A stretch of DNA of 48,446 nt. Source: Calcarisporiella thermophila CBS 279.70 (lineage: Eukaryota > Fungi > Calcarisporiellomycota). Shown in pieces: positions 12,980 to 33,069 of this stretch. The DNA lies in the NCBI RefSeq assembly GCF_041956535.1, contig NW_027192213.1, positions 1 to 48,446 on the forward strand. The letters run 5' to 3'. The notes beneath the pieces were generated by a model that searched no databases, was not told the origin of the DNA, and saw nothing but the letters and a program-made list of their open reading frames with translations. Each line of letters begins with the position of its first letter. Position 1 is the first letter of the stretch. The position numbers were made by a program, and so were the translations under genes.

Positions 12980-13121
12980 TATGTCTAATAAGGTCTATCC
13001 CGACAATCCTCTAGCTATCCCTAAGCTCTTGATTGCCCTTTCTTAAACACTTCAGAAGACTAATAAACGACACAAAGTGGATTGTAAACTAATCCGGTTC
13101 TATCTCAATACAAAATAGCAC
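12980..13121 (+). repeat. ~140-bp dispersed repeat, copy 1 (uninterrupted; possible solo-LTR-like element)
   Basis: Direct repeat of 14073-14538 once the SINE there is removed. Runs TGTCTAATAAGG...CAAAATAGCA with an internal AATAAA. No clear TSD. Confidence 0.8.
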
Positions 13122-13139
13122 GCAACTAGTTCCTAATTA

Positions 13140-13443
13140 TTTTTTTTTTTTGATCAATCAATGGAAACTTTTATTAGGTTAATAGTTCCCAATATTACAA
13201 GAAGCAGACGTGAAAGAGCTTGACGCGAAGTAAGTTATCCACGTCATGTTGACGAGCATCGCTCATTGCGTCAGTAATAGTCGTTATTGTTGTGTTTATC
13301 GTGAAAGTCGTGTTTGTCGTGTTAGAGCCAAAGGGCAAGTGGACAGCAATCTCAAGAAGCGAGTGCTGGTGGGGATTGCGGGGTTCGAACCCGCGCCATT
13401 TCGATTATGGCACCTGAAGTGGACCACTACACCACCTCTCCCC
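13140..13443 (-). mobile_element. tRNA-derived SINE, subfamily A, copy 1 (full length)
   Basis: tRNA-like head with A box TGGTGTAGTGG, B box GGTTCGAACC and a ...CCCCACCA end. 292-nt head+body, A12 tail (T run 13140-13151). TSD TAGTTCCTAATTA at 13127-13139 and 13444-13456. Confidence 0.93.
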
Positions 13444-13521
13444 TAGTTCCTAATTAATGTCGGAGCTTGAATATCGTTGGGATAGCTTGATATGTGACTC
13501 GAGTTATGACAATTACCAAAT

Positions 13522-13606
13522 CCGGCTATAGCTCAGCTGGTAGAGCGGAAGACTGTAGTTGATAATAGCAATCTTTAGGTCCCTGGTTCGAATCCGGGTG
13601 GCCGGA
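13522..13606 (+). tRNA. tRNA-Tyr(GTA) with 12-nt intron (13559-13570)
   Basis: Acceptor CCGGCTA/TGGCCGG+A; D arm GCTC..GAGC; anticodon arm GAAGA-CTGTAG[intron]A-TCTTT; T arm CCTGG-TTCGAAT-CCGGG; TTTT terminator just downstream. Confidence 0.97.
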
Positions 13607-13964
13607 CATTTTAATATTTTTTTAATATAGTTGCTATTTTGAATCACGTATCCTTGAAAAATCTATGAATGAATTATTGATACCTTAAATACTAATATTT
13701 TTTAGTTCCATCTTCAACTATAAAAGAACGCATCAAATTATTTAATGCAATAATATACTCAATATAGAATATACACAGATTATAGTATAAATCAATTATA
13801 TCAAAACGAAAATCAATCCATTATAAAAATTTTGAATGAAATGGAAACTAAAGGTGAACAAACGTAATTTTTAGCAATATAGTGTATAAGTAGAAAGCTA
13901 TTCATTGGGCAGTTCGTATCTTTTCTAAAAATGTAATTATATCTGTATAAATAGCCGCAAAAAA

Positions 13965-14049
13965 TCCGGCCACCCGGATTCGAACCAGGGACCTAAAGAT
14001 CGCTATTATCAACTACAGTCTTCCGCTCTACCAGCTGAGCTATAGCCGG
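13965..14049 (-). tRNA. tRNA-Tyr(GTA) with 12-nt intron, convergent with copy 1
   Basis: Reverse complement of 13522-13606 except for the last intron base. T6 terminator follows immediately (A run 13959-13964). Confidence 0.97.
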
Positions 14050-14072
14050 ATTTAGTAATGTTGCGTCGAATA

Positions 14073-14538
14073 TATGTCTAATAAGGTCTATCCCGACAAT
14101 CCTCTAGCTATCCTTAAGCTCTTGATTGTCGGGGAGAGGTGGTGCAGTGGTCCACTTCAGGTGCCATAATCGAAATGGCGCGGGTTCGAACCCCGCAATC
14201 CCCACCAGCACTCGCTTCTTGAGATTGCTGTCCACTTGCCCTTTGGCTCTAACACGACAAACACGACTTTCACGATAAACACAACAATAACGACTATTAC
14301 TGACGCAATGAGCGATGCTCGTCAACATGACGTGGATAACTTACTTCGCGTCAAGCTCTTTCACGTCTGCTTCTTGTAATATTGGGAACTATTAACCTAA
14401 TAAAAGTTTCCATTGATTGATCAAAAAAAAAAAAATTAAGCTCTTGATTGTCCTTCCTTAAACACTTCAGAAGACTAATAAACGACACAAGATGGTGGTT
14501 TGAAACGTATCCGGTTCTATCTCAATACAAAATAGCAC
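14073..14538 (+). repeat. ~140-bp dispersed repeat, copy 2, interrupted by a SINE
   Basis: 14073-14130 plus 14453-14538 realign with 12980-13121 (a few substitutions/indels). Begins ~24 bp upstream of tRNA-Tyr copy 2. Confidence 0.8.
14131..14435 (+). mobile_element. tRNA-derived SINE, subfamily A, copy 2 (full length)
   Basis: Same 292 nt as copy 1; by eye there is one substitution (A box TGGTGCAGTGG). A13 tail 14423-14435. 17-bp TSD TTAAGCTCTTGATTGTC at 14114-14130 and 14436-14452. Confidence 0.95.
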
Positions 14539-14760
14539 ACTTTATTCTAACTAAAGATATTCTCCTTTTTATACTAAAGATAATGTATCACAAGAAGGTA
14601 AAATATAAAAAAATATAAGGTGATTCTGGATAAATATGTTAATCGTATGATAATAAGTATACTGGTCACCCCACAAAAATATCTATCACACCACATAATG
14701 AATAAAAAGAAAAGTAAGTCACGAAATCTAAGCCTCCTTTCCTCCTACTGCGCCATAAAT

Positions 14761-15323
14761 NNNNNNNNNNNNNNNNNNNNNNNNNNNNNNNNNNNNNNNN
14801 NNNNNNNNNNNNNNNNNNNNNNNNNNNNNNNNNNNNNNNNNNNNNNNNNNNNNNNNNNNNNNNNNNNNNNNNNNNNNNNNNNNNNNNNNNNNNNNNNNNN
14901 NNNNNNNNNNNNNNNNNNNNNNNNNNNNNNNNNNNNNNNNNNNNNNNNNNNNNNNNNNNNNNNNNNNNNNNNNNNNNNNNNNNNNNNNNNNNNNNNNNNN
15001 NNNNNNNNNNNNNNNNNNNNNNNNNNNNNNNNNNNNNNNNNNNNNNNNNNNNNNNNNNNNNNNNNNNNNNNNNNNNNNNNNNNNNNNNNNNNNNNNNNNN
15101 NNNNNNNNNNNNNNNNNNNNNNNNNNNNNNNNNNNNNNNNNNNNNNNNNNNNNNNNNNNNNNNNNNNNNNNNNNNNNNNNNNNNNNNNNNNNNNNNNNNN
15201 NNNNNNNNNNNNNNNNNNNNNNNNNNNNNNNNNNNNNNNNNNNNNNNNNNNNNNNNNNNNNNNNNNNNNNNNNNNNNNNNNNNNNNNNNNNNNNNNNNNN
15301 NNNNNNNNNNNNNNNNNNNNNNN
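14761..15323. other. Assembly gap (563 N)
   Basis: Run of N. Confidence 1.
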
Positions 15324-16437
15324 CTATATTGTGCCAAATTTCCTCACAACAGTAATTGTTGGAATCGTATCGAGATATCTGCAGTAGGACAACCAAGCCA
15401 AGCCACGTAATCCCTCAAGCCCTGCTATTACCCTGTTACAGGGTATACCACAGATTGAAGGACCATGTACGTTCCCGCTGGGTAAATGTGTGCTAGCTGG
15501 CACAAAGGTCAAGAACTTCCGTACAAAAATCGGGAGGCTCTACAAGACAAGCAAAGGAGAGAATATCACTCCGGAATGGAAAGAGACCTCAAGCGATTCC
15601 ATCAATTGGGAGGTAGCTTGGATGTACTGGAAAAAGCGGCCGAGCGAACCCAAGCATAGGACACTAAGATGGAGACTCTTGAAACACAGATTGGTGATAA
15701 ACATCATCACTAGTAACTGGACAGGAGAACCTAATATTTGCAAGCGATGCAGAACCAACGCAGTGGAAACCATTAGTCATGCTTACCTGGAATGCCCGGC
15801 CATAAATCAGTTATGGCAAACGGTAGACAACTTCGTATGCCGCATCCTTGGAGTGAGAGCCCACGAGTCAACCAAGGAAGACAGACTATTTGGAACAGAC
15901 TACAAAACCATGGGCTACCAACGGGAAGTAGTGTCAACGGTCCATGATGCAGCAATTTGGATCGTCTATCGATCAAGATTATCGATAATAATGGATAACG
16001 CCCAACCAAGTGAAATAGCGCTCGCTGAACAACTAGGTCACGAAATGCAAAAAATCGTGAGATCCAAATGGTGGTCAGCGTCCATAAAGGATAAGAAAGA
16101 AGATTTCCAAGAGCTTTGGTGTAAGGGAAGTTGGATACAAGTCCAAGGAGACGAAATATCCTTCAACCAAAACACTTAGCTCCAATACGACCTTGCCGAA
16201 TACCCTACCACCCGCATTCTAGTTTTCCTTCTTTTTTTCTTTCTATATTAGTCCATATTCTTTTCCTCACTTGTATAATACCGTCCTTGAAAAATAGGAT
16301 GGTATTCATACGATCAATCACTACTTACATGTATTTCCCCTGACAATTTTTTTTTTGAGAGTATTTCTCCTGACAAGGCACTATACTAACTTAAAAAGAT
16401 ACTTTTCAATAAAGATCCATAAATCCCAAAAAAAAAA
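15324..16437 (+). mobile_element. 3' end of an L1/Tx1-type non-LTR retrotransposon (ORF2 zf-RVT/CCHC region, 3' UTR, poly(A))
   Basis: WEVAWMYWKKRPSEPKHRTLRWRLLKHRL and CKRC-x8-H-x4-C (CKRCRTNAVETISHAYLEC). Stop at 16179, AATAAA, then A10 at 16428-16437. Confidence 0.9.
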
Positions 16438-16445
16438 TCTCAAGT

Positions 16446-16551
16446 TGTGCCAGGAGCATTACCTGGGTGATTTTGACGTAGAAGCTGCCCTACCTTTTTA
16501 ACAGGATAGGACACTTTTCAATAAAGGTCCTTTGTTAAAAAGAAAAAAAAA
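16446..16551 (+). mobile_element. Very short 5'-truncated LINE 3'-end stub
   Basis: GACACTTTTCAATAAAGGTCC (16510-16530) matches GATACTTTTCAATAAAGATCC (16398-16418) at 19/21 positions. A-rich tail 16537-16551. ATCTCAAGT occurs on both sides (16437-16445, 16555-16563). Confidence 0.65.
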
Positions 16552-16563
16552 GCTATCTCAAGT

Positions 16564-18110
16564 CGTTGTATTTTCCTATGGTTAAAATCACTCGATGTCC
16601 ATATTATCTGTCTCCAAGAAATGCACACAGCCTCCAACGATTACCAATGGTGGTCCCAACATTGGGGCTACTCCGCCCTATGATCAAAACACAATGCTAT
16701 TCTTTCAACATCGGAACATATCAGCCTAGAAGAGACTTTTAGATCAGAAGACGGGAGAATTATCCAAGCAAAAATCATCAACAAAACCACCCAGAACCAA
16801 GACCCTCTACACATCACAACAGTATATGCGCCTGCGAACCCTCAAGATCGAAACAACTTCTATCAAACCACTTTCAAACAACTCCAAAAGGCACGCCAAG
16901 TAGTGGTAGGAGATTTCAATGCCTACCAAAGCCCCAGCTTAGACCACTGGCCACCCCTCCCAGGGTCGAACGGACAAAGAACATCATGGAAGTCACTGGA
17001 AGAGTCACTAAGAGATTTAGACCTGCACGACATCCATAGACACTTCTCCTCCCGAGCAGATCAATTCACTTGTGAGACGGTCACAAGCTCAGGAATAGTG
17101 AAAACACGTATAGATCACGCGTATACCACACCAACCCTCCTAGAAAAATCCCAGGACTTGGAAACCATAACCCCATCCCTATTCGAAGGGAGATCCACAT
17201 CGGACCACTTAGGCCTACTCCTTACGATCAACCAAAGCACCCGGAATCAACGTGGACCAGGATGGTGGAAATTAAACACCGACGTACTAGATGATGAAGC
17301 TTTCGTCAATGAGATTCAATCCCTCTGGAGAAGGAGACCCGCTATCACCGCTATTATACAACCTGGCGCTGGAGCCGTTGCTACATCATATTCGAATGAC
17401 AATCAAAGGAATATCGGTAAACTCAGAACACCAGATAAAAACCGCGGCTTTTGCAGATGATGTGGTAGCGGTAGTGTCCGACCAGGAAGATATCAACAAA
17501 ATGACAGAATGCTTGGAACTGTTCAATCTAGCCTCCAACTCAAACAAATTTCGATAAATCCGAAGCAGTACCACTTACTACAGAGAGCAGGATGCCCTTG
17601 TTGTCACCATGCCTTTTTATCCCGGAAGAAGGTACCTTTACTCTGCTGGGAATCCCTTTCAATACCAAGCACATCTTCCCGCCCACGTCATTCTACGAAC
17701 AATTGTTGGAGAAGTTGGAGAAAACAGTTAAAACCTGGAAATCACGCTCAATATCCCTCCTAGGAAAAGTTTTGCTTGTTAACTCTAGACTTTTGTCCAA
17801 GATCTGGTACTTAGCCTATCTCATTCCCTTTAAACAAGACTTCTTTGATAGAGTTTCCCGGATAGTCCAGCAATTCCTCTGGGGAGGGCGCCGCTCGCAA
17901 ATTGAGAGAAGTCTCCTGGAACAACCAAAGGGCTTTGGTCTGGGATTAATTGACCCAAAACACCAATGTACAGCCATCCTTGCTTCCTGGATCCAAAGAA
18001 TCCACAATGCGCAAAGAGAACGCATACCGCCGCCATGGTATCACTTAGCCATCCATATTCTTACGAAACACTATCCTAATGAAGGCTCCAATAAATGACC
18101 ACGACCATAC
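16564..18110 (+). mobile_element. Degenerate L1/Tx1-type LINE ORF2 (APE endonuclease plus partial RT), internally deleted and 3'-truncated
   Basis: EN motifs IICLQE, DGR, VYAP, GDFN, RIDH, SDH and GPGWWKLN are joined at ~17330 directly to RT motifs GDPLSPLLYNL and FADD, then LGIPF, GKVLLVNS..SKIWY, FLWGG and GLGL. Stops and frameshifts are present. Confidence 0.92.
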
Positions 18111-18635
18111 ATTAATATTCGCAGGTTTAGAAGCTGGCCCTGCTCTTAATCCTGCAAAACGTGAGAACTAAGTGTGAAAACAGTCATAAAAAATAAAAAT
18201 ACAGTAATAAGGTGTCAAGAAACTTTTGGGAGGCACTTTATTTAGTATTTTGCCAATTATATGTAATAACATTTTTTTACCCACAACAAATATGTGAATT
18301 CTCGAATAAATGTTAATTTTCAAATTCAAGTGGAATCTAGGTATAAACTTATTTCACGATTTTACTGTTTTTGGACTACTTGCTAAGAATAAAGAGCTAA
18401 ATCTTTGTTATTACTAGCGCTATTATCAAATATTTGAGATTTTTTCTTTTATATTGCGTTATTTCAATATTTTTGTTGAATTTTACTTTTACCAATAGTT
18501 TTATTATATTATATTCCTTTTTTCAGTTATGGATTGAAGAAAAATTTGATAATATCAACATGTTGATAAATCCATATTGCACTATGTTATAAAAACTTAC
18601 AGTATAATTTTTTGTTGGGAAACAGAGCAAATCAG

Positions 18636-20394
18636 TTATTCCTCAGGCTTAAGCATGACCTTTACGCAACCATCCTCATGCTTGTCAAAGAGAGAATAAG
18701 CTTTGGGAGCTTCTTTGAAAGGAACGCGGTGCGTAAATAAAATTTTGCCTGGATCTGGCTTCACTTTTTGGTTCTTGAGAATATCAAGAATATCTTTCCA
18801 ATATTTTTGCACCAAAACTTGGCCGCCATGAATGCATACGCTCTTTTCCATGAGGGCACCAATAGGGAACTGGTTACAAGTACCGACATAATCTCCTATC
18901 AAACTAACACTTCCACCTATATCACATTGTTATTCGAGGGTAAGTATGTCATATTGATTTGAAAATTGAATTAATATTTGGGTCAATCTAACCTTTCTTG
19001 ACACACTTGATGCACTCAGATACAACCTCCGGAGCGTCAGTTTCAAGCATTAGGGCCCGAGAAACCTTATGCATCATTGTCTTGGGAAAACGAAAACCCA
19101 CACAATCAATAGCACAATCAACTCCTCCAGGACAAATTTCTTGCATCCTCTTTACAACATCAGTGTGCTCAGTCGCATCAATAGTCTCCACACCGATGTA
19201 TTCGCATGCTAACTGCAGGCGCTCTTTGTCATTATCAATTGCAATTATCCGAGATGCTCCACGATACTTCGCCCAAATTTGAGCCATTAGTCCAACAGGG
19301 CCGCAACCTAATAATAGTGGATCGTCAGTGTTAAAAAATGGCGAAAGAACATCTCTGATGTAATATAGTGCTCTAATTACCCCAAACTGCTACAGTTCGC
19401 CCTTCAGTCACATGTCCACGCTCATTAGCATGCCAGCCAGTGCACGCAACCTAGAAAACGTAGGTATTATATCATTATTCTAATATGCGAGCGAGAAAAA
19501 GAATGTGATAACTACATCACAAAGAAGCAAAGCATCCTCGTCGCTTAATTCCGATTCAGATGGCAACTGGAGCAAGTTCACATCCGCAAAAGGTACGCGA
19601 ATATATTCAGCTTGGGTTCCTTCATAACCCCCTATATCTCAGTGATTCTATATGAAACTAGTGCATCTTCACAAAATTCTACGGATGAATTAAACGTTTA
19701 CCTGTAAGATGAGAATACCCAAACAGACCGGCAGTGCGGTGGCCTAAACCAGCAGAAATAATATTAGATCAATCTTAATTGAAGCTAGTAATATTATTAT
19801 TAGTACATACCGTACATCTGCTCCATATCGCGACTGGGGTTCGTAGTATCGCAGCAAGAGAACAATCCTCGCTGGCAGTATTCGCATTTTCCGCAAGCAA
19901 TGACCGCAGAAATTGCTACACGCTCGCCTTCCTTAAAATTCTTTACTTGACTCCCTACCTGATATCCCCAAAATGCACCATATAATAAACAGCAATCAGA
20001 AACCTATATTTACTGTCCGATTTTGTAACCGATTTTTATTATAACTATTGTTACCTGATGAACGATACCAATTGCTTCGTGACCTAATACATCGCCGCTT
20101 TTCATACCCTGAACCGTATTGTGGTAGAGATGAAGATCGCTTCCACAAATAGTAGTGGCAGTCATCCTCACGATAACATCGGTAGGCTCCTGCTCGTGAG
20201 GAAAAAAAACCAAATCATCACCAAATTCTATTCTTTCAATTTTCACTGAAAGAAATACTCACAGTGAGTGTAGGCTTGCCACATTCATCCACTCCCACCG
20301 ATGTATTACCATGCCAAACTACCGCTCTCATTGTCCCACCAGATTTCTGAGGGTGTTGAGTGGTACTAGGAACATATTGAGCGCCAGAAGACAT
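18636..20394 (-). CDS. Zinc-dependent medium-chain dehydrogenase (formaldehyde-dehydrogenase-like), multi-exon
   Basis: MRAVVWHG; TTICGSDLHLY; GHEAIG; structural-Zn Cys cluster (IACGKCEYC...C); GCGPVG; DCVGF; C-terminal FDKHEDGCVKVMLKP. Confidence 0.92.
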
Positions 20395-21302
20395 GTTTTA
20401 GTAAACTTTTGAAAGTGAAGGTTGTGCTCTTTTCTTGTTAATTCCCAGAGAATTCAATCGCCAATCTATTTATACTAAAATCAACGAAAGAAATTTTTTT
20501 GCCACCATTGTGTGACTGGTTGGCGTCTATGCATTGAAATTACCGAATTCAGGATAGGATGTGAAAGTGGCATGAAAGTGGCATGAAGGTGGTTCTCAAA
20601 GCCCATGATTAAAACCTCAGACTCATTGCAACTTCCAAAAGCATCTCCAAATTAAAATAAATTCAGCCGAGATATATAGTTATGGTCGGAATAATTGAAA
20701 TAATGCAGAATAAAATCAATAATCGAATTGATTGTAATTAAGTAAAGAGGATTGATCCTGTTTCCTAGGTTGCTTTTATTAATCTATTTTATAGAAATCC
20801 ATATTTAATAATTTATAACAAAAAACGCCCGATTTAAAATGGATATCAATGACAACTTTCTTAGAACATTTCCAAAATTTGAGATCAAAAGTGCTAGATA
20901 TTATAAAATACCTATTTGATCGGTTTTATTATATCCCGTGACCTTCTCGATTGGCTTATAACTTGTCTCCTTGCATGAAATTATTCAATATATGTTTTCA
21001 TTGTAAAGCTAATGATCTCAATGATTAATCAATGTAAAAAATACTTTCTACATTGATCTTATCGTATGCGAGGTGGATAGTAAACATCTATTATTGATTT
21101 GATCAAACTATCGAAAAAAGAATAATAATGGATAGTACTCCTACCACCGAATTTATTAATAGGTATTTTCATAATATTAGACGAAATTGAATTGGCAAAA
21201 AATTTCCTCTCAATAGGATACAGTATTAAATACAATAGATTACAGTAATAAAACCATCAATTAATTATGATTAGAAATTTGAAAGACCAATTATTTCTAA
21301 TA

Positions 21303-22091
21303 CTAAACGTCGTATTGAAGTAAAATATAGAGTAAATTTTGAAGCAATTTCCTAAGCATCTTGGTAAGTTGAGGATCAGGCTTTGTATTTACATTCATAT
21401 CAGGATTCGATGTCATATCATCTGGCACAATTGGATTTAGTGTGGAGTTTGTGGGATCTACTGGCTGTATTTCGTCATCTTTTTGTAATTCGATAGTTGC
21501 ACATGCGAGCCTAATCTTTTCCACCGGCGCATGAATGACAATGCTTCTCCCAACAATAGAATTTTCTCCAGATAATGATAACTCGGGATCATCATATTCT
21601 TGGTCAATGTTATTGTAGCCATCGACTGAACCCTTTAAAGGACCATGTTTACCGCTTAAATCCCCAGCTTCTAGAACACCTCCACCTTGGGTTTGGTTCT
21701 TGCTTATGATTTCGGGCGTATTGAAATGGCCCAGTGTCGAGTAACAATTACCATCAGCTGGAACACTTTTTACATGAACGTGATAGTTGTGGGTTGCGTT
21801 AAGACCAGAATAAACCATGACCCTTACATGCAGAGGAGAATCTTTTGATGCCTCAGTGAAAATGAATTTTGCAGTAATCCCATCTATTAGAAAATATCAT
21901 TTGAGTGTATGAACAAAGAAATCTGCTTGATTAATTAACTTACTCTGACCATCAATAATAGCTTTAGCCGTGGCTGGGAAAGCTATGCTATCTGAGCCAT
22001 TCTCTGCACGTAACATGAGATGAGAAGTTGGAAGGGCCCATGTGACCAAACTCAAAATGCTAAACGTAGTAATGAAGGATATATATCTCAT
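21303..22091 (-). CDS. Secreted Cu-only (SOD5-type) superoxide dismutase
   Basis: Signal peptide; YHVH; C..TLGHFN; EAGDLSGKHG; SIVGRSIVIH; RLACA. The two Zn-only His are absent and there is no electrostatic loop between SIVIH and RLAC. One intron near 21885-21942. Confidence 0.88.
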
Positions 22092-23774: not shown

Positions 23775-26700
23775 TTAATTACTCTCGTCAGCAACCTCTG
23801 ACGAAGTAAGTCGTACATCAACCGGCGTAGTTTGCTTAGTCCACATCTTTGCATATTTTCCGTCCGGGATCTTGATAAGCTCAAGATGTGTGCCTTGTTC
23901 CGCGATAGCTCCATCATGAATAACAATAATATTGTCTGCGTGCATGATGGTCGACAAACGATGTGCAACAATTATACAAGTACGATCTTTGCACACACTA
24001 TAGAGCGCTTCCTGGAGATTCCGTTCAGTGACTGAATCCAATCCAGATGTTGCTTCATCTAGCAACATTATATCTGGATTTTTCATGACAACACGTGCAA
24101 CAGTAATTCTTTGCATTTCTCCGTGGGATAGCGTAGACCGAAATTTATCAAATTTAGTCTGGAAGCCTATAAAAGAAAATAATATTTCTAGCTCTAGTTT
24201 CTGAAGCAATTAATGATAATTTGACAATAATATAATTTACCTCTTGGCAGCTTAGAGATAATTTTTGTGGCCTGAGCAATTTGAGCTGCCTGCTCTATAT
24301 CGGTCATATTTATGTTTAATTCGTCGGAGGTGCCATCATGCATATGAGCCCGTCCATACCCAATATTAGCAGCTAAGGTTCCAGTAATAATATCAAAGTC
24401 CTAAAAATGCATTGTCAAATATATGAATATTTGACAAAAACTGATGCAATATTATGCTTAAAAAGCAGCAATATTCACCTGGGTAACCATGCCAATACGA
24501 CTCCTGAGGTCATGTAGGCGCATTTGACGAATATCTTTGCCATCGATTAAAATCCGGCCTTCAGTGGGATCGAAATATCGCATCAGCAAGCGGAGTATTG
24601 TACTCTTACCCCCGCCAGTTTCACCCACAATAGCAAGAGTCTTTCCAAGAGGCACAGAAAATGATAAATTCTTTAGTACTTGGGATCGCGTAGGATAACC
24701 AAATGACACATTTTCTAGGTTAGCAATGAGAAATGGTTAAAAAGCAGGTAAAAATCAGAGATAGAGCGGTCATATTAATGTAGATTTACCGAATGTTATT
24801 CCTTCGCTAATTTTCTCGAGAGGTGAAGCATCTGGCGCGTCGCAAATGTCGAATTTCCAAGTTTGTAAAGTGTAAAAGTCCTCGAGCCGGCCTAGATACG
24901 AGCGGAATTGCTCAAATTGTTTGCTCAATTTAGCAAACGAATCCGAAACTTTAGATACCATTTGGCGGCCCATGACTAGATCACCAGGAGTGAGCTGTCC
25001 TTGTATCACTTTCATTCCGAAAGCATAGGTGGTCAAAATTTCTACCGCCATGGAAATTAAATCAAACCCATTCAGGACAATAAAAGTGAAAATGTCGCCT
25101 GGCTCTGAGCCTATTCCGTAATATTTTTGTGCATTTATCTCCAAACTACGACGATGATTCCCTAGCTCATACTTTTCTGATGCAAAATTTTTCACGCAAT
25201 TAAAATCATGAGCGATTGCCATGTTTTCTTTCTGCCACCTTCGGCGTAGAAAACTAGCATTCCAAAGACGCTTCTTGCACTGATCCTTTATGTTTACTTC
25301 GACAATTTTGAACAATGCAGCGAAGAGCACGAGAGAAGCATGGTAGCCATCGTATGACACAGCCAAGTAGGAAGTGGCCAAACCGACTTGAAACAATATT
25401 GAGCCGATAATTTCAACAAAAAAATTTAAGAGATTGCTGAAAGTTTCTTTCCTAATAAAATGCTGCGCATTCATAATAGCCCAATCCTTGGACTGGTAGA
25501 ACCGATGATCCGCCTCTTGGAGTCGCATAAAGATATTTAGCTCGGCAAGATTTTCCAAATACGATGTCACTTGACTTTCACAGTAGGTTTTGAAGTTTCT
25601 CAAAATATGTCGAGAAAAGAATTCGAGTCCTTTTGATTGTAGAATAGCTATGAAAAGCGACTGACCCTGATCCTCGACGATATTAAAAAATGCATCGGTA
25701 ATAACCTTATTTTGCCACTGTAGCCAGACCTCGAGCCAGGCATCAATTAACACGAATAAAATGTGGATATAAAAGTAGATCCGAATACGCCATTCTTTGC
25801 GAGGCCATGCAAAATCAACAGCATAGCATAGTCGAGAAATAATAACGCTGAATTGGGTGGGTGCACGGACACTTGAATCTAAATCATAGAAAAAATAATT
25901 GCACTCTCTCTCATCATCGTCAAAAGGATCCTTCAGGTAAAATTCGAATTCAGCCGATGAGAAGGGCTCTCGTGAAATGTTATCATCAGACTTTCCGCCA
26001 AATAGAGTCAACCATATCTTCCTCCCTTCCACGGCTATCCTCTGGATATATGTAAAAAAGGCGATGATAGCCATGGGAACTATAACTGCAATCACTCGAG
26101 CACTTGCATTGATGAATAGAAAGCCTCTTTGCTGTATCATCCCCGCTACTGAGCTGCTAGGGTAGTATGGTAACCATTGGAGGAACTCCATAAAGTTGGA
26201 AGCAACTAGCGATAACCACCACATCTCACGCTTAACATTAAACTGGTATGTTTCTATCTTATCGGTTTGGAAGCTGGCGAAATAGCTGATATAATGCGAC
26301 GTAAGTGATATTGCGTTGGTAATATATCCAAATGATATAATAACGAAAAATACTGCATCATGATGGCTAAGAATCTCTCTTTTCATTAAATCCCACCCAG
26401 TCGCTCCAATACAGAATACTGCGTGCCAAGAAAGGAGGAACATTATAGTGCGTGTAGCATTGACCAATTGTTGAAGCGTATACACCCAAGGCTTTAGGAG
26501 CAATATCTTTTTCTTAGTAGTTTTCTTTTTCTCGCTCTTAATATCTTTACCATTTGCGTCCTCAGCTAGATAGATTAGATAAGATTAGCGAAGTAATTAG
26601 ATGAATTAGTTCCCAGTTGACTTACCAATCTTTTCTGTTGATACAGTCTCTATTGTGTCCGTATTATTGAGAACTGGTGAATGTATGAACAAAAGTACAG

Positions 26701-26890
26701 GAAGAATAACCAAAGATATTATTGCGCGCAAAAACACTATTTTTGAGGAGCTAGGTTGTGCTATAGTGGTACAAAAAGTCATGCACAAGATGAGCGTGAT
26801 CCGGGATAGTACTTGGCGCTCAAGTTTTTGAGGCGGTGACGTTGCGGATGTAAAAACCGAGAGTAAAAAATTTGGGCAGAATCTTTTCAT
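23775..26890 (-). CDS. ABC half transporter (HMT1/ABCB6-like, extended N-terminal membrane region), divergent
   Basis: Walker A GETGGGKSTILRLL; Walker B MLLDEATSGLD; IVAHRLST; signature reads LSHGEMQR; long upstream hydrophobic exon 24770-26503. Confidence 0.85.
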
Positions 26891-29285
26891 TTTTTCAACA
26901 AGGAATCCTTGTGACAAGTGGAATCAAATATGGAATTACGGTGATCAAGAATTCTTCTCAATTGCAACAGATAAGTTCAGCAGATATTCACGCGTTTGAT
27001 TAAATAGTTTTTCAATGTTAAATGTAAATGCCGACTGTTGAAACCCAGGCCAAGATGATATATAGAAAAGGTATCAAAAGGATTTCCTAGTAATAGCCTA
27101 TACTAACATCGAATCAGTCGTGTATTAAAATGAGAAAAAAAAAGTCAGCTAATATTAGTTAAAAGCATATAAAATATTTACCAATATTGGGGTGTATACT
27201 GTCGTAAAAACGATCTCGGTTTTAATAATCTAAGTACATAGCAAACTAATTCTCCAGTTGCAATGAAAAATGGAGAGAGTAGAAAAATTTGACTCAGACA
27301 GGTGAACAAAATATAGAAAGATAGAAAGGGAAGTGAATAAGAATTTTTCTCTCAAACAGAAAGAAATAGTAAAAACCCAGACTTTTATATTAGAAAAACA
27401 GATTGTTAATAGAGAACCCTTAATGGTGTGGCTTGTAAAACTTTAAGTAGTAACTGTTCTCAGGTATTGCGGACTATGAATCATCGTTGGTTGGTCCGAA
27501 CAAATAAGACTGAATTTGGAAATATTTTAAATAAAACATCGCTGGCAAAACTCTTCTTTGACACCTGTGGCTATCGGCTTTTCAATTATTCTAAGCCTTC
27601 TGTATGATGAACACAAATGGAGTCATGCGCGACATATTATATTATTGTGAAGATATAATGTCAGATATGCAATGTGAACAACCAGCAAATCAAAGCTCTT
27701 TGAAGTATTCTACAACCGGATATAAAAGCATCAAATACTATGCGCTCCCAGAACACACACATTTATTCTGTTCTACACTTGTAAGCTATCCCATCCCAAT
27801 TATCTAAACACTATCATGCTATCATTCCATCAGGTTACACATAGTTCAGATGATGGGGCCACATGCTGTTCTAAGTATAATTGAATTTCACCAACCAGTT
27901 GCCACCACCTGATATATCAAACACGTAGCAGTAATGAATTATTCGGCGCCAAATACGCCGCTCTAAATACTGCTTAAGACTACGAATAACATCAAGAGCT
28001 GAAGTTGAAGCACCAGCTAAGCTCATGACACATAATATACTTCGAACAACTTAAATCTACTTAAATTTATTCGGCAAATACTTACAGTATATACCTCTTT
28101 TTAGCTCTTGGAGTAAAATTTCTACAGAGAAAATATGGTGCCGATGACCTCATAGACTTACAGTATATTTAATATCAAAAAGCATATATATTTAAATTCA
28201 TTGTATCCAAATGAACTTGTATATAAACGCATGAAATTTAACGGTAGAATTTGTCAATTTTACAAAGAAAAACATCCATTGCCAATCGTAATACTGTTAA
28301 TTGTTATTTTGTAGATGTTTTCTAGAATTTAAAAGTTACAGGATTATCTCACATTTCTGGACTCCCGTTTATATTTCTGACATAATGATTCCAATAGTTT
28401 GAATATTCACATTGGAAACTATATCATTCACACGAGCCCGTAGCTCAAATTAGAGCTTAAATCAGGTTAATTCATCATGAAATGACGGCTAAACAAATCT
28501 CGAAATACAACTGCGGGTTGATATGGCAAATCCAACGTAGCCATTAAAGGTAAAAATATATATTGCAATATTGAATATCCAAATTAAGGATATATATTAA
28601 TAGCGAAAAAGCTTTATATGCTTTTCTTCTGAAAACTTCTTTAAGTGCTCTCTGTGCTCTCAAGCCAAATTAAAACTCAATTGATTCTTTTACGGTGGAG
28701 AATTGTCAGTACGAATAGAGTTTTAAATTGGCAGTTTTATTTTTGCCAGTTGCATTATTCATTTATTGAGAAAGTGCGAAGCATACTATCAGATGCGCAA
28801 CCCCATTATATCAAGATATCAGAATTCGTTCAACAGATGCAGAATTAACACTCCATAAGATAGTTGGCGTATCAGACTGTTTACAGATTTGAAATTTTGA
28901 AAATAGTATATTCACTAAACAAAGTTATTGTATATACAGTATTATTGCTCCTTAAGAACACCCTTTTGTTCTATGTGCTGTAATTCCCCCCCCCCAAAAA
29001 AAAATTATGAATCACATAGATATAGGCTAAAGCGCGCTGTTTTCGTTATGAAATTCGCTAAGCAGATGAAATTAAGGACATTACATGTGAGCACAAAATA
29101 GTTAAATAATATTTCTTAGGACGAGATTTTATTATTCCACAGAGCTAGGTGAAGCTTTGTTGCATAATATGATTTCTATGTTAAACTTCAATCATACAAT
29201 ATTCCAATATGAATTTAAAGAGAACTAAGGATTGTTTATTTGAAATTTGATTTTCCTATTTTCTATTACTACTAGTGAGACGGGT

Positions 29286-30722
29286 TTAAATTAGCGCCGT
29301 AATAAGACCAGTAACGGCCACACCGAATGAAGAAATGGCGGAAAATCTTCCAGCACTTGACACTGAATGTTGACTCTGAGCGGCAGCTGCAGCAGATTTG
29401 CTTTGGCTACTTGATCCAGCAGGTAATGAAGTCGATGGGGAGGTGGCAGAGGACTGGTTAGTGTATTGTAAGAAATTTGGGAAGGTGTAGTTCTTCTCTA
29501 CATAAGGCTGAGTGATGTTCATACACGCCGTCAGAGGAGTAACATATTTATATGCTTGCTTGAGTTGAGGATAATATTTGATGGCCAAGGCAATGGTTGC
29601 AGCATTGATTTCATGTTCCAAAACCATAGCACCACTCTGGGAGAAAGTGCCATTCTTTCCTTTCTGAATAATGTTGTTAAAGTTCTGTTCGATTGTAGGT
29701 ACCGGTTCTGCACCGAAAGGCTTAACATTCCAGTCATCAGTGTCGAGATTCCAGAGAACAGCAGTTAAATTCAGATGATTTGCAATGGCACGAACACGAT
29801 CATCAATATCTCCGTAAGGCTATAATATTTTACACTATGAGAACAACTATCTGCCATTTCCGATATATGATTTATACACTTACAGGACGCCAGTAAAGAG
29901 GAGTAACGCCAGTCACCATTTTAATAACTTTAACTGTATAGTAGAGCTCTGCAAGCACCTCTTGGTTGCTCAAAGTGGTCATCGCCTGATGAGACCAAGT
30001 GTGTACAGCGATTTGGTGGCCATCAGCATGACCCCGTTGGGCCTGCAAAGGCCAGTTTGCAACATTGCTACCAATATAGAAAAGTGTTGCCTTTTGATTA
30101 TTCTGCTTAAGGAAATCATAAAGACCGACATCAGTACAATTGGGGCCATCCTGCAGTGATAGAGGAAAAGTTAATTAATCGCATATTGGAAAAACTATTA
30201 AGGATATCGAACTCACATCGTAAGTCAATGCCAAAGTTTCTATCATAAAAAATAATCATAGATGTTAATACTCTATTTCAATGAACCGCTTCGAGGAATG
30301 ATCTAAATACCTGGTTCAGGGCAAGCAATGATGTCTTGTGCCAAACCAGCGTGTTTGGGTTTTGTACATGTAGAATACGTCCACCAACAATCTGGATCTT
30401 CTGCAGAGTAACCGGTTGTTGCAATATTACCTTGAGCGTCTTTCTGTCTCACTGGCGAATTGGGTATTTTAGACCAATCAATGGAGTTATATAGTTGTTG
30501 GAATTCGGCCGAAGTGTTCGTGCCCGTGGTAGCTACTTTCCAATTCTCAGGGAAATTGGGAGGTTGGAAGTTGAAGGAAGAGCTATATGGAGTGCACTGT
30601 TGTTTTTGCAATTCTGGAGTTTCATAGGGCGGTAGACCGTCCGCATCTTGGGCTTGGGGCGAATTTTGCCCAAAGGTCAAGGTGAAAACAGACAGGAGAA
30701 CAATACCAACTTTCCAAGACAT
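29286..30722 (-). CDS. GPI-anchored chitin deacetylase (CE4)
   Basis: Signal peptide; DPDCWWT; CE4 motifs LTYDDGP, HTWSH, RPPYGD, DTDDW, VLEHE; Ser/Thr-rich linker and hydrophobic C-terminus. Confidence 0.93.
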
Positions 30723-31901
30723 CGTTATCGAGCGCACCGAAAAAATATTTATCCACGTACCAACGTTGATTTTTACTTCAAAAAAAAACAGCTCTCAACC
30801 CCTGAAAACTTTTTAACCTGGATTAGAGATGAATATTTGTAAATGGAGTGAAGAGAAAAAACTATAAGGTAAAAGGTTGAATAGAGAAAGTGTGAAAAAG
30901 AAAAACTCAAGCAAGCTCAAGTTTTAAAATAACCCTCGCTGATTTTATTTTTAGCAAAGCCATTTTTTTATTCGCTAATTGCCAAGTAAAAGAATATACT
31001 TTAAGTGGATGCCAAGCCTTCCAAATAGGTCGATATATAGCAACCAGAAATTGGGTCCCAATCACTATCCTCAAAAAAATTAACTCAGAGAGGGGCCTTC
31101 ATTCCAATATAAGCACACACCACTTAAAATGACACTATTAGTTTAACCGTAATTTTGCGAACTCAGCACTGACGAAGCCTTCATTACTATATTATCTACT
31201 TGTAATCCCTTTTTTCCACCTTTTTGCTCTGTCCTACTCTCTTCAATGTGACTTTTATTAGTTTTGGTGAAAGGGAAATCTTGAAGGAGTCTTAAGTTGT
31301 CTAAGTTTATCAGACTTACACTTGTCAACCTCAGGTCCCCACTCTATAACTTTTGGAGTTTCATTTAGATACTTTAGCCATAAATAATTCGCCTCCTTGT
31401 TGGTTTCGGCTCATTATTTACCCAAAAAGATAATCTGTGAACAGCTAAAAACTTCACGCTATCTAGTATTCTTATGGTTAGGCACCGTTAATATTCAGCT
31501 GAAATTTCACGCCTTCTAATAAAATACAAAACTTTCCTCTCTATGTGTTATACGATAATTTGATGTTCAAACTTTTTTCAAGGTAATGTTTAGGTTCCAA
31601 TATGAGAAAAGTAGTAAATATACTACCATCGCTACGAGAAAGAAGTTTGGATAGTCCAAAGTAAAATTTAAAAATTGAATTTCGGATATAAGATAATCTT
31701 TGTATTACCGAGCTATATTTAAACGACGATATCTGGAAAGCATCGATCTCAATGCAAGTATACCATATACCAGAAAAAACCAAGTGATATTATCAAGTCC
31801 GAGAAAAATGTAATTTGAATGATCATAATTTACCATAAACTTAAATAACCCTTGATAGGCAATTAGAGTTAGAGATATAGATCAACGAAAAAAATGAAAA
31901 T

Positions 31902-31974
31902 CGAGCGTACCAGGGGTCGAACCTGGAATCTCCTGATTCGTAGTCAGGCGCCTTATCCATTTGGCCATACACCC
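31902..31974 (-). tRNA. tRNA-Arg(ACG)
   Basis: Exact reverse complement of 32833-32905; T-run terminator on the minus strand. Confidence 0.97.
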
Positions 31975-32053
31975 GCTCGCGAAAAGTTGGTCGAATTAAT
32001 ATAGATAGTCAGAAATTTTCTGACCATATTTATTGGTCTACCTCGGGCCGCAT

Positions 32054-32447
32054 TTACACGCTCTACGAGGATTCGCCAGCGTAGTGTGCGGTGTCTTGGG
32101 AGTGTTGGCCGTTTTTGAATGGAGGTCCAGACCTTTTCCCATTCCTTTGCCGTGGATGCAACCTCTGGCCAGGATTGGGGCGTCAGCGTTTCTGGTTCCG
32201 GAGAGTCATTTCGCTGTAAGTGCTTTCCCCGTCGAGTGGAGTATTCCAGGACGGGCGCGCCAGCCAAGTGACAGAGGTGGAGTGGGAAACGAGGAGGTGG
32301 ATGTTGTCGGGGTATGGCAGAACATTTCGTGATTTTCTCTAATAGGTTGGGTGGCAGGATAAGGTATCCGTGTTCCCATGATAAGGAAAAATGGTTATAG
32401 CGGCGTTCGCATGCTTTTTTTCGCCTTTCCGCGGGTTGCGCAGAAGG
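32054..32447 (-). mobile_element. L1/Tx1-type LINE ORF2 fragment (zf-RVT region), truncated at both ends
   Basis: One open frame across the fragment. FPLHLCHLAGAPVLEYSTRRGK...WEKVWTSIQKRPTLPRHRTLRWRIL aligns with FPLGKCVLAGTKVKNFRTKIGR...WEVAWMYWKKRPSEPKHRTLRWRLL of the 15.5-kb LINE. Confidence 0.85.
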
Positions 32448-32462
32448 ATGCGGCCCGAGGTA

Positions 32463-32751
32463 TTTTTTTTTTTTTGATCAATCAATGGAAACTTTTATTT
32501 AATTTCCATATATTACATGAAGTTAATGTCAATGGACTTAACGAGATATAGGTCCTTGATCGATAGACTTTCAATCGATATGCGTGTATCGTAGTTGTCG
32601 TGAATAGCATGTACGTGAAACCGATGTAATCTTTTGTACTTATCGTAAGGGCGGTCTTTTCAATAATCAAGACTCAGCTTCTGATCAAGTGGATAGCAGT
32701 CACAAACTAAGAGTAAGTGCTGGTGGGGGAAATGGGATTCGAACCCACGCC
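32463..32751 (-). mobile_element. tRNA-derived SINE, subfamily B, 5'-truncated within the head
   Basis: Starts GGCGTGGGTTCGAATCCCATTTCCCCCACCAGCACT (B box and CCA kept, A box lost). Ends AATAAAAGTTTCCATTGATTGATC-A13, identical to subfamily A. 17-bp TSD GGATGCGGCCCGAGGTA at 32446-32462 and 32752-32768. Confidence 0.93.
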
Positions 32752-32832
32752 GGATGCGGCCCGAGGTAGACCAAAAAATATGGTCAGAAAATTTCTGACT
32801 ATCTATGTTAATTCGACCAACTTTTCGCGAGC

Positions 32833-32905
32833 GGGTGTATGGCCAAATGGATAAGGCGCCTGACTACGAATCAGGAGATTCCAGGTTCGACCCCTGGTAC
32901 GCTCG
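32833..32905 (+). tRNA. tRNA-Arg(ACG)
   Basis: GGGTGTA/TACGCTC acceptor; CCTGA-CTACGAA-TCAGG anticodon arm; CCAGG-TTCGACC-CCTGG T arm; TTTTT terminator. Confidence 0.97.
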
Positions 32906-33069
32906 TTTTTGTATTTTATATCGGAATTCAAAGAGAATTAACAAATTACGGCATATTTTTTCCCCGTGGCCGACGAGATTATTCACATGCACTCTAATGT
33001 ATAAATTGAAAGTTGATTCGAAAATGTTCCTGAATTTTTTGACACCTTGACTCCAATCTAAACTTGGTC

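What the first reader, a model, noticed from the sequence alone, without database searches (positions are those of the whole stretch)
13127..32905. Candidate tRNA-gene-targeted SINE/LINE system: three independent SINE insertions at a fixed ~64-65 bp / ~80 bp upstream of tRNA genes, all head-to-head
Seen in the sequence: (1) SINE 13140-13443(-) with tRNA-Tyr 13522(+): 78 bp from SINE 5' end to tRNA +1, tRNA-proximal TSD edge at 65 bp. (2) SINE 14131-14435(+) with tRNA-Tyr 14049(-): 81 bp and 64 bp. (3) SINE 32463-32751(-) with tRNA-Arg 32833(+): 81 bp and 64 bp. The TSDs read on the element strand (TAATTAGGAACTA, TTAAGCTCTTGATTGTC, TACCTCGGGCCGCATCC) share no sequence beyond an initial T, so these are separate events chosen by distance rather than by target sequence. 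All SINEs I found in the window are at such sites. Established: in target-primed reverse transcription the TSD edge joined to poly(A) marks the first nick, and Dictyostelium TRE5-A inserts ~50 bp upstream of tRNA genes in this orientation via ORF1p-TFIIIB contact. The fungal Pol III-targeting elements I know (Ty1, Ty3, Tj1) are LTR elements. Inference: an L1/Tx1-type LINE tethered to the Pol III initiation complex mobilises these SINEs. I am not aware of a described fungal SINE/LINE pair that does this, but I cannot search the literature here.
Basis: partly seen in the sequence, partly recalled or inferred. Interest (0 to 1): 0.93.

Follow-up and report, generated by a model that had tools for sequence, protein, structure and literature searches.

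The report
tRNA-gene-targeted LINE/SINE retrotransposon system
Two families of short parasitic DNA (SINEs) and the L1-like LINE that copies them insert repeatedly about 65 bases in front of tRNA genes, always pointing away from the gene; for LINE-type elements, the two reviews I read record this strategy only in social amoebae.

Summary
All three SINE copies in the window have poly(A) tails and 13-17 bp target-site duplications (TSDs). Each TSD edge lies 64-66 bp upstream of a tRNA gene, head-to-head.

- **SINE families:** there are two tRNA-derived families, A (about 292 nt) and B (about 322 nt). The window's third copy is a 5'-truncated B.
- **Tail:** the shared 24-nt tail occurs 167 times in the 28-Mb genome and 0 times in the control.
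- **Position:** of 50 copies examined, 29 have a tRNA gene 74-90 bp from the SINE head, always divergent. Nine are stacked or split, 7 run into gaps or contig ends, and 5 have no tRNA nearby.
- **Spacing:** at 27 sites with clear TSDs the edge lies 60-73 bp from tRNA +1 (median 66), across 19 anticodon classes and with no target motif.
- **Site re-use:** the same site is used repeatedly, regenerating the TSD each time.
- **Partner LINE:** it is L1-type, with endonuclease, reverse transcriptase and zf-RVT domains. It shares the last ~50 nt and a 3' hairpin with the SINEs and inserts at the same position.

Tethering to TFIIIB or Pol III is inferred, not shown. The fungal origin was not verified. 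First-stage notes on other windows of this genome report the same pattern. I rate it a new variant of a known kind (Dictyostelium TRE5-like).

The parts
13127..13139 (-). TSD, poly(A)-side copy of SINE-A copy 1
   Evidence: Identical to 13444-13456; read directly, script.
13140..13443 (-). SINE-A copy 1: tRNA-like head, body, shared 24-nt tail and A12
   Evidence: 99.7-100% identical to 5 other genomic copies. The head scores 19.8 bits on the Rfam tRNA model, below threshold.
13444..13456 (-). TSD, head-side copy; its tRNA-proximal edge marks the inferred first nick, 66 nt from tRNA +1
13522..13606 (+). tRNA-Tyr(GUA) gene with a 12-nt intron; target gene of copy 1
   Evidence: Rfam RF00005, 56.8 bits. 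ARAGORN with introns parses it as Asp/GTC. Its identity does not affect the conclusion.
13965..14049 (-). Second tRNA-Tyr gene; target gene of copy 2
   Evidence: Rfam RF00005, 56.8 bits.
14114..14130 (+). TSD, head-side copy of SINE-A copy 2 (17 nt); edge 65 nt from tRNA +1
   Evidence: An uninterrupted paralogue of this site lies at about 13020-13040.
14131..14435 (+). SINE-A copy 2, inserted inside another tRNA-associated repeat
   Evidence: The 3' hairpin is at 14383-14412.
14436..14452 (+). TSD, poly(A)-side copy of copy 2
14761..15323 (.). Assembly gap inside a repeat; not part of any SINE
   Evidence: The flanks are contiguous in paralogues on contigs C33 and C22.
15424..16179 (+). C-terminal ORF2 piece of a second, distant LINE family, co-oriented with copy 2 (head towards tRNA-Tyr(-))
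   Evidence: zf-RVT E = 6.8e-9. 31% identical to the partner LINE's C-terminus.
31902..31974 (-). tRNA-Arg(ACG), inverted duplicate
   Evidence: Lies in arm 31890-32053 of a 164-nt inverted repeat.
32054..32445 (-). Fragment of the partner LINE's ORF2 (C-terminal region; no tail), lying behind the SINE at the same target site
   Evidence: 91% amino-acid identity to residues 9-132 of the ORF2 C-terminus query.
32446..32462 (-). TSD, poly(A)-side copy of SINE-B
   Evidence: Direct repeat D1, 100%.
32463..32751 (-). SINE-B copy, 5'-truncated by 46-47 nt (lacks box A)
   Evidence: About 40 full-length B copies extend 46-47 nt further 5'. The copy is 95-99% identical to other B copies.
32752..32768 (-). 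TSD, head-side copy; edge 64-65 nt from tRNA +1
32833..32905 (+). tRNA-Arg(ACG); target gene of the SINE-B and LINE stack
   Evidence: Rfam 61.5 bits; ARAGORN.

Best explanation
An L1-type non-LTR retrotransposon integrates by target-primed reverse transcription at a position set by distance from tRNA genes. Its ORF1 carries a CX2CX4HX4C knuckle. Its ORF2 has an APE endonuclease, a reverse transcriptase and a zf-RVT domain.

The first nick falls about 60-73 nt (mode 64-66) upstream of the mature 5' end, on the strand that carries the tRNA sense sequence. The second nick falls 13-18 nt further out. The element therefore always ends up head-to-head with the gene.

Two tRNA-derived SINE families, A and B, have Pol III box A and box B heads. 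They end in the LINE's last ~50 nt: a hairpin with AAUAAA in its loop, then a short spacer ending in TTGATC (UGAUUGAUC in the SINEs and the main LINE family), then poly(A). The LINE machinery therefore copies them in trans to the same sites.

Shown here: the anatomy of the elements, the shared tail, the position and orientation rule, re-use of sites, and recent activity (SINE-A copies are at least 99.6% identical).

Inferred: the ruler is a LINE protein bound to the Pol III pre-initiation complex at the gene's 5' end (TFIIIB or Pol III itself), as reported for Dictyostelium TRE5-A ORF1p.
For: Abundance: the tail has 167 genomic hits and 0 in the control.

SINE side: of 50 SINE copies, 29 have a tRNA gene 74-90 bp from the head, all on the head side and all divergent. 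Of the rest, 9 are stacked behind or split by other elements, 7 lose the flank to N runs or contig ends, and 5 have no tRNA within 240 bp.

Spacing: at 27 TSD-defined sites the edge lies 60-73 nt from +1 (median 66, sd 3.4), across 19 anticodon classes. Information content around the nick is at most 0.6 bit.

Site re-use: the same site is hit two or three times with the same TSD on C17, C44, C24, C7, C84, C20 and C3.

tRNA side: within 1.5 kb of 63 sampled tRNA genes there are 26 elements upstream and divergent, 3 upstream in the same orientation, and 5 downstream.

LINE: domains; match to human L1 ORF2p at E = 7e-53; a 5.07-kb copy with a 17-bp TSD at -61 of tRNA-Gln; a fragment at -64 of tRNA-Lys.

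Shared 3' end: alignment. The hairpin is kept with different stem sequences in SINE-A, SINE-B and two LINE subfamilies.

TPRT signature: 5'-truncated SINE copies carry TSDs.

Ruler: the distance to +1 does not depend on box B position (r = 0.06; sd 3.2 against 6.0 for distance to box B). tRNAs with an intron or long variable arm average 67.8 nt against 67.0 for the others.
Against: - No protein contact was tested.
- About 15% of informative SINE copies, and at least two LINE copies (C4 and C34), lie away from any detectable tRNA.
- One LINE fragment has its TSD at -84.
- No element was seen near the four 5S genes or the one U6 gene. The element lists were incomplete, so this is weak evidence.
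- The partner LINE's tail differs from the SINE tail at 2 of 24 positions, and no LINE with the exact SINE tail was found.
- The LINE's central RT region is unread (N runs) in every copy I could fetch.
- Only about 70 of the 167 tails were examined.
Confidence: 0.82

Rival explanations
1. Targeting is real but needs no protein tether. The endonuclease prefers a DNA or chromatin feature created by the Pol III complex, such as the edge of the TFIIIB-bent, nucleosome-free region or a positioned upstream nucleosome, somewhat as Ty1 uses nucleosomes.
For: The position (-60 to -73) lies just outside the region TFIIIB is known to cover (my knowledge). The spread of about 14 nt is wider than a rigid contact might give. 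The nick shows only a weak pyrimidine/A preference.
Against: Strict orientation (29 of 29 copies) and an sd of 3.4 nt are more easily explained by a directional protein contact. Ty1-type nucleosome targeting gives periodic insertions over hundreds of bp, which is not seen here.
Confidence: 0.12
2. Insertion is random, and only copies in the harmless zone upstream of tRNA genes survive selection in a compact genome.
For: The genome is gene-dense, at 28 Mb. A few copies do lie elsewhere.
Against: Selection cannot produce a 14-nt window, a single orientation, or repeated use of the same TSD by different families. SINE-A copies are at least 99.6% identical, which is too young for purifying loss to have sculpted the pattern.
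Confidence: 0.02
3. The pattern comes from segmental duplication of tRNA-plus-SINE units, not from independent insertions.
For: Some flanks are shared between loci. The same TSD recurs at three loci, on C8, C11 and C44. tRNA-Arg is duplicated in inverted form in the window.
Against: There are 19 different anticodon classes with mostly unrelated TSDs and flanks. Where flanks are shared they are other repeats. In those cases the SINEs differ in family, truncation point or exact offset within the repeat.
Confidence: 0.02
4. A sequence-specific endonuclease recognises a DNA motif, as in Tx1-type elements that insert into small-RNA genes.
For: The element is of the L1/Tx1 superfamily. There is a weak Y|A preference at the nick.
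Against: The insertion lies outside the gene. There is no conserved motif from 10 nt before the TSD through at least its first 15 nt (IC at most 0.6 bit). The 65-nt spacer differs between loci.
Confidence: 0.02

Closest known systems
Dictyostelium discoideum TRE5-A/B/C (tRNA-gene-targeted L1-type non-LTR retrotransposons), and NLTR-B of Polysphondylium pallidum
   Same: Both are APE-type, two-ORF, oligo(A)-tailed non-LTR elements. Both integrate at a fixed distance upstream of tRNA genes whatever the tRNA type, with the element's 5' end facing the gene. Both produce stacks at the same gene. Source: review PMC5911963 (TRE5 at 40-54 bp upstream; ORF1p binds TFIIIB) and PMC5006619.
   Different: The distance is about 65 nt rather than about 48 nt. 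Dedicated tRNA-derived SINE partners exist, which I do not know to have been described for TREs. No A/B/C-module UTRs were seen, and the 5' UTR is very short. The host is not a dictyostelid on present evidence. The closest ORF2 relatives in 1.8 billion representative proteins are only 31-34% identical. Common descent with TREs was not tested.
Yeast Ty3, Ty1/2/4, S. japonicus Tj1, Yarrowia Tyl6/Ylt1, Dictyostelium DGLT-A (LTR elements targeting Pol III genes)
   Same: All choose the upstream side of tRNA genes as a safe haven, and TFIIIB or Pol III serves as the landmark (PMC5911963).
   Different: Those are LTR elements that use an integrase. They have different distances (Ty3 at the transcription start site; Ty1 over a window of up to about 1 kb upstream) and no orientation rule of this kind. 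The elements here use TPRT with poly(A) and variable 5' truncation.
Tail-sharing (stringent-type) SINE/LINE pairs, such as eel UnaSINE1/UnaL2 (my knowledge)
   Same: Both have a tRNA-derived head with box A and box B, a unique body, and a 3' tail copied from the partner LINE that contains a conserved hairpin just before the repeat or poly(A).
   Different: Those pairs insert dispersed through the genome. Here the SINEs inherit a position-specific target next to the kind of gene they derive from.
Tx1-group sequence-specific LINEs (Dewa, Mutsu, Keystone; my knowledge) and Utopia (PMC4640811)
   Same: They are LINEs associated with small-RNA genes.
   Different: Those insert at a defined sequence inside the repeated gene. 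Here the gene stays intact and the site is defined by distance only.

Membership tests
TRE5-like tRNA-gene-targeted non-LTR retrotransposons | APE endonuclease plus RT in ORF2, a separate ORF1, and an oligo(A) tail | tested here: met
   Pfam Exo_endo_phos, RVT_1 and zf-RVT. Match to L1 ORF2p at E = 7e-53. ORF1 of 184 aa lies upstream. Poly(A) is present.
TRE5-like tRNA-gene-targeted non-LTR retrotransposons | Integration at a fixed distance upstream of tRNA genes of any type | tested here: met
   At 27 sites the distance is 60-73 nt (median 66), across 19 anticodon classes. The distance differs from TRE5's 40-54 nt.
TRE5-like tRNA-gene-targeted non-LTR retrotransposons | Orientation rule: the element's 5' end faces the tRNA gene | tested here: met
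   29 of 29 adjacent SINE copies are divergent. LINE copies L072 and L065 are divergent. From the tRNA side the tally is 26 against 8.
TRE5-like tRNA-gene-targeted non-LTR retrotransposons | ORF1 protein binds TFIIIB subunits; targeting depends on box B and TFIIIC | not testable with these tools
   Indirect only: the spacing follows the gene's 5' end and not box B.
TRE5-like tRNA-gene-targeted non-LTR retrotransposons | Phylogenetic placement of the RT within the dictyostelid TRE clade | not tested
   No TRE reference sequence was available. The RT core is unread (N runs). The nearest public ORF2s are 31-34% identical metagenomic contigs.
tRNA-derived SINE with LINE-derived tail | tRNA-like head with box A and box B | tested here: met
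   ARAGORN calls the B head a tRNA with an aberrant anticodon loop. Rfam gives sub-threshold matches of the heads to tRNA-like models: tRNA and tmRNA for SINE-A, tmRNA and mascRNA for SINE-B. Box B GGTTCGAA(T/C)CC can be read directly.
tRNA-derived SINE with LINE-derived tail | 3' end shared with an autonomous LINE in the same genome | tested here: met
   The last ~50 nt are alignable, and 22 of 24 tail positions are identical to the main LINE family. The hairpin is conserved.
tRNA-derived SINE with LINE-derived tail | TSDs, poly(A) and 5'-truncated copies (the TPRT signature) | tested here: met
   TSDs of 13-18 nt. Truncated copies start at A35, A63, B45-50, B96 and B143.
L1 superfamily (L1/Tx1) | N-terminal APE, RT, and a C-terminal Cys-rich zf-RVT domain, collinear with L1 ORF2p | tested here: met
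   Residues 3-580 align with residues 8-572 of human ORF2p. zf-RVT is present. L1 versus Tx1 clade was not resolved.
Sequence-specific Tx1-type LINEs that insert into small-RNA genes | A conserved target sequence, with insertion inside the repeated gene | tested here: not met
   No motif at the site. The tRNA genes remain intact 60-73 nt away.

The most novel reading that the evidence does not exclude
This is an independently evolved Pol III-tethered LINE lineage outside the dictyostelids, possibly in an early-diverging fungus, and not previously described. It has spawned tRNA-derived SINEs that home to the upstream side of tRNA genes. It would be the first SINE families with position-specific integration. 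It would also be a second natural system for asking how a TPRT element reads the Pol III pre-initiation complex.
Probability: 0.5. Interest if true: 0.72.

Novelty: new variant of a known kind. Interest (0 to 1): 0.63.

Why it matters
In the two reviews I read (2016 and 2018), position-specific integration of non-LTR elements next to tRNA genes is recorded only for dictyostelid amoebae. One of them calls its origin 'a mystery' (PMC5006619).

A second lineage that differs in three ways would provide a comparative test of convergent 'safe-haven' evolution in compact genomes:
- a different spacing (-65 rather than -48);
- a very short 5' UTR and a small knuckle-bearing ORF1;
- two young SINE partners.

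The SINEs are small, nearly identical and apparently active. That makes them convenient reporters for retrotransposition assays. It also makes them natural markers of tRNA-gene neighbourhoods, and a frequent cause of assembly gaps there.

Tried and rejected
**Organism identity:** not obtained.
- The sequencing-run index gave only a soil metagenome with a 0.10 share of words.
- The exact-protein look-up was blank.
- The two protein-atlas calls were uninformative on taxonomy.

**Cross-species test:**
- The nearest ORF2 relatives (P0003, P0004, P0007; 31-34% identical) sit on 5-6 kb metagenomic contigs that hold only the element and no tRNA gene, so they say nothing about targeting.
- Two exact-pattern scans of metagenome contigs, for the SINE tail and the B head, found nothing.

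**RNA structure:** RNAalifold on the 3' ends gave no consensus because MAFFT misaligned the subfamilies. Single-sequence folds were used instead.

**LINE body:** I could not read the whole ORF2.

**Other Pol III genes:**
- 5S and U6 genes show no nearby listed element, but the lists cover only 100 of 167 tails, so this is undecided.
- Rfam found no Pol III gene at 13 loci that lack an ARAGORN tRNA call.

**Complex prediction** (ORF1p with TBP or Brf1) was not run. The host factors could not be fetched and would have needed spliced models.

**Rejected readings:** segmental duplication, survivor bias and a sequence-specific target. Reasons are given under the rival explanations.


Full report
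**1. The observation**

Reading the window confirms three poly(A)-tailed short elements, each flanked by a perfect direct repeat.
- 13140-13443 (-): 13-nt TSD.
- 14131-14435 (+): 17-nt TSD.
- 32463-32751 (-): 17-nt TSD, reported independently by the repeat finder.

Rfam at gathering threshold finds exactly four tRNA genes in the 48 kb. Two are intron-containing tRNA-Tyr genes, at 13522-13606 (+) and 13965-14049 (-). Two are tRNA-Arg(ACG) genes, at 31902-31974 (-) and 32833-32905 (+). Each SINE lies upstream of one of them, head-to-head, with the tRNA-proximal TSD edge 64-66 nt from tRNA +1.

The assembly gap at 14761-15323 lies outside all of these features. Its two flanks are directly contiguous in two paralogous copies of the same repeat, on contigs C33 and C22. 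The gap could therefore be about zero length or could hide an insertion. Continuity is plausible but not proven.

**2. Two SINE families, and a correction**

Searching the window's own 28.2-Mb genome showed that copies 1 and 2 belong to family A. This family is about 292 nt plus A(n), and six copies were found. They are 99.6-100% identical to one another.

Copy 3 belongs to family B. At least 40 copies were scored out of 184 candidates, and median pairwise identity is 96.2%.

Aligning the upstream flanks of B copies shows that the full-length element starts 46-47 nt further 5' than the window's copy. Copy 3 is therefore a 5'-truncated insertion that lacks box A. Its head-to-tRNA distance resembles that of the A copies only by coincidence. 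The TSD edge is the informative coordinate.

Both heads are tRNA-like.
- ARAGORN calls the B head a tRNA with an aberrant anticodon loop.
- Rfam gives sub-threshold matches of the heads to tRNA-like models: tRNA and tmRNA for SINE-A, tmRNA and mascRNA for SINE-B.
- Box A-like and box B sequences can be read directly.

Apart from the 3' half of the tRNA-like head (about 78% over ~70 nt), A and B share only the last ~35 nt: the 24-nt tail plus poly(A).

**3. Genome-wide test, from the SINE side**

The tail pattern, allowing up to 3 mismatches, has 167 genomic matches. The reversed control has none.

In 42 non-redundant loci I located 50 SINE copies.
- 29 have a tRNA gene 74-90 bp from the SINE 5' end. 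In all 29 the gene is on the head side and on the opposite strand.
- 9 lie behind, or are split by, other elements at a tRNA gene.
- 7 lose the relevant flank to an N run or a contig end within 30-190 bp.
- 5 have no tRNA within 240 bp. Rfam finds no other Pol III gene at those loci.

For 26 elements with unambiguous TSDs, plus one LINE, the tRNA-proximal TSD edge lies 60-73 nt from +1 (median 66, sd 3.4). These sites are upstream of 19 different anticodon classes. TSDs are mostly 15-18 nt.

Base composition around the nick shows only a weak pyrimidine/A preference, at most 0.6 bit. There is no other conserved position from 10 nt before the TSD through its first 15 nt.

Even with a generous 1,000 tRNA genes, a random site falls in such a window and orientation with probability of about 2.5e-4. 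The observed fraction cannot be chance.

**4. Re-use of sites**

Many loci carry stacks of co-oriented elements whose TSDs are the same sequence, or are offset by a few nt.
- Three elements on C17.
- SINE-A in front of SINE-B on C44.
- A SINE-B in front of a LINE fragment on C7.
- Further examples on C24, C84, C20 and C3.

Each new insertion duplicates the site again and pushes older elements outward. The window shows this twice. The LINE ORF2 fragment at 32054-32445 lies directly behind SINE-B at the same TSD. Upstream of tRNA-Tyr(-) there is a co-oriented series: SINE-A, other repeats, the gap, and a second LINE family at 15424-16179.

Where flanks are shared between loci they are other tRNA-associated repeats. 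In those loci the SINEs sit at different offsets, or belong to different families or truncation classes. This argues against segmental duplication.

**5. From the tRNA side**

Sixty-three tRNA genes were chosen only by Rfam score. I crossed them with the incomplete lists of tails (100 of 167) and of LINE ORF2 C-terminal hits. Within 1.5 kb there are 26 elements upstream and divergent, 3 upstream in the same orientation, and 5 downstream. Most of the exceptions lie in tRNA clusters. Several further genes have a divergent tail 4-7 kb upstream, as expected for long LINEs or stacks.

**6. The autonomous partner**

A variant tail that differs from the SINE tail at 2 of 24 positions ends a family of variably 5'-truncated elements. 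Their last ORF carries zf-RVT. A protein search with that ORF gives 138 genomic matches.

The best-readable copy (L072, contig C3) is 5.07 kb.
- Its 17-bp TSD has its proximal edge 61 nt from tRNA-Gln(UUG) +1, head-to-head.
- Its 5' UTR is about 35 nt.
- ORF1 is 184 aa (169 aa from the first ATG), has a CX2CX4HX4C knuckle, and has no Pfam match.
- ORF2 is 1,349 codons, of which 541 are unread (N run). It has Exo_endo_phos, RVT_1 and zf-RVT domains.
- Its N-terminal 586 residues align collinearly with human LINE-1 ORF2p at E = 7e-53.

A second copy (L071, C34) starts at the equivalent position in ORF1. This suggests that this is the true 5' end.

Other LINE placements:
- A 330-bp fragment has its TSD at -64 of tRNA-Lys.
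- One fragment is at -84 of tRNA-Thr.
- Copies on C4 and C34 are not near any tRNA.

In several loci the assembly breaks into N runs 83-103 bp from a tRNA gene, where the repeat begins. These runs are repeat-induced scaffold gaps. Two of them swallow SINE-B heads.

**7. The shared 3' end**

SINE-A, SINE-B and the main LINE family align over the last ~50 nt. All of them, and a second LINE subfamily with a different tail sequence, fold into a 7-9 bp hairpin. AAUAAA sits in or beside the loop, and the hairpin ends 5-10 nt before the poly(A).

The stem sequences differ between families while pairing is kept. One example is a C-G pair in the LINE against a U-A pair in the SINEs (individual z-scores -1.3 to -3.3). 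This is the anatomy expected of a tail-recognising (stringent) LINE and its SINEs. It is suggestive only; recognition was not tested.

**8. What sets the distance**

The distance to tRNA +1 is uncorrelated with the position of box B (r = 0.06). Its spread is about half that of the distance to box B (sd 3.2 against 6.0). Genes with an intron or a long variable arm, where box B lies 10-13 nt further in, have the same mean distance as the others (67.8 against 67.0).

The ruler is therefore anchored at the 5' end of the gene: box A, the start site, or TFIIIB. It is not anchored at the box B end. From established TPRT logic, the TSD edge joined to poly(A) marks the first nick. That nick falls on the tRNA sense strand about 65 nt upstream, just outside the region TFIIIB is known to cover.

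Tethering of a LINE protein to TFIIIB or Pol III is the most economical explanation. It parallels the reported TRE5-A ORF1p-TFIIIB contact (PMC5911963). It remains an inference.

**9. Comparison with the literature**

The 2018 review of Pol III-directed retrotransposons lists TRE5, TRE3, NLTR-A and NLTR-B as its only non-LTR examples. All four are L1-type and all are from dictyostelids. Its fungal entries are all LTR elements (PMC5911963).

The 2016 survey states that TRE-like elements were not found in other amoebozoans and that their origin is unresolved (PMC5006619).

Four full-text searches found no description of a tRNA-targeted LINE or SINE in fungi. This is absence within one library, not proof.

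The nearest ORF2 relatives among 1.8 billion representative proteins, apart from fragments that are probably from this genome, are 31-34% identical. The lineage is therefore isolated. Its relation to TREs is untested.

I could not establish the organism.

**10. Verdict**

The finding is a real, active, genome-wide system of an L1-type LINE and two tail-sharing tRNA-derived SINEs. It integrates at a fixed position and in a fixed orientation upstream of tRNA genes. It works like Dictyostelium TRE5 but differs in spacing, architecture and host, and it has SINE partners.

I rate it a new variant of a known kind. First-stage notes on other windows of the same genome describe the same pattern. They are unchecked and were not used as evidence.

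Noticed in passing
window 31890-32053 and 32754-32917: A 164-nt inverted repeat (96% identical) duplicates tRNA-Arg(ACG) plus 78 bp of its upstream region. Both inner ends coincide with the SINE/LINE target site, and a tail-less LINE ORF2 piece bridges them. This may be a by-product of an aberrant TPRT event.
   Followed up: partly
window 15324-16600: A second LINE family. Its ORF2 C-terminus is only 31% identical to the SINE partner, though zf-RVT is present. It has its own tail (...CAATAAAGATCC... then A9) and short pieces that repeat an ATCTCAAGT-like TSD. It points head-first towards tRNA-Tyr(-).
   Followed up: partly
window 12980-13122 and 14094-14540: Another repeat sits upstream of both tRNA-Tyr genes. 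SINE-A copy 2 is inserted in one copy. The other copy, 1.1 kb away, is an uninterrupted 'empty site' with a single copy of the TSD sequence.
   Followed up: partly
L066:1-138; flanks in L030, L032, L049, L054, L055, L056: An LTR-like repeat begins with TGTTACGAG about 11 bp from tRNA +1 at seven or more different tRNA genes. SINEs have inserted into it at varying offsets. This suggests a further, closer-in tRNA-targeting element.
   Followed up: no
L024, L048, L033 (flanks between the SINE-B head and the tRNA): The motif TGGCGCAGT (box A-like) lies 42-59 bp upstream of the Gly-UCC, Ser-AGA and Leu-CAA genes on the opposite strand. The surrounding sequence is otherwise diverged. Its function is unknown.
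   Followed up: no
L071 (G000:C34:32000-39500): Two elements of different LINE subfamilies share one T-rich TSD at a site with no tRNA gene. The only RNA hit nearby is a sub-threshold SNORA16-like match (25 bits against a 35-bit cut-off) 146 bp away. This may be a non-tRNA hotspot.
   Followed up: partly
G000:C32:154242-154279 (L034) and G000:C10:844572-844616 (L007): Head-only fragments of SINE-A (38-45 nt, 100% identical) sit at the canonical head-to-head spacing: 83 bp from a SINE-B head and 87 bp from tRNA-His. Ordinary 5' truncation cannot produce them. They may be split copies, or SINE heads acting as targets.
   Followed up: no
L062-L072; window 14761-15323: Scaffold N runs cluster next to tRNA genes. 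They cover LINE bodies, always including the RT core, or SINE heads. Retroelement stacks are a main cause of gaps in this assembly.
   Followed up: partly
G000:C31:280129-280655, C53:18771-18889, C5:1186735-1186848, C30:253305-253417: Four 5S rRNA genes and one U6 gene were located. No listed tail or ORF2 hit lies near them, but the element lists are incomplete.
   Followed up: partly
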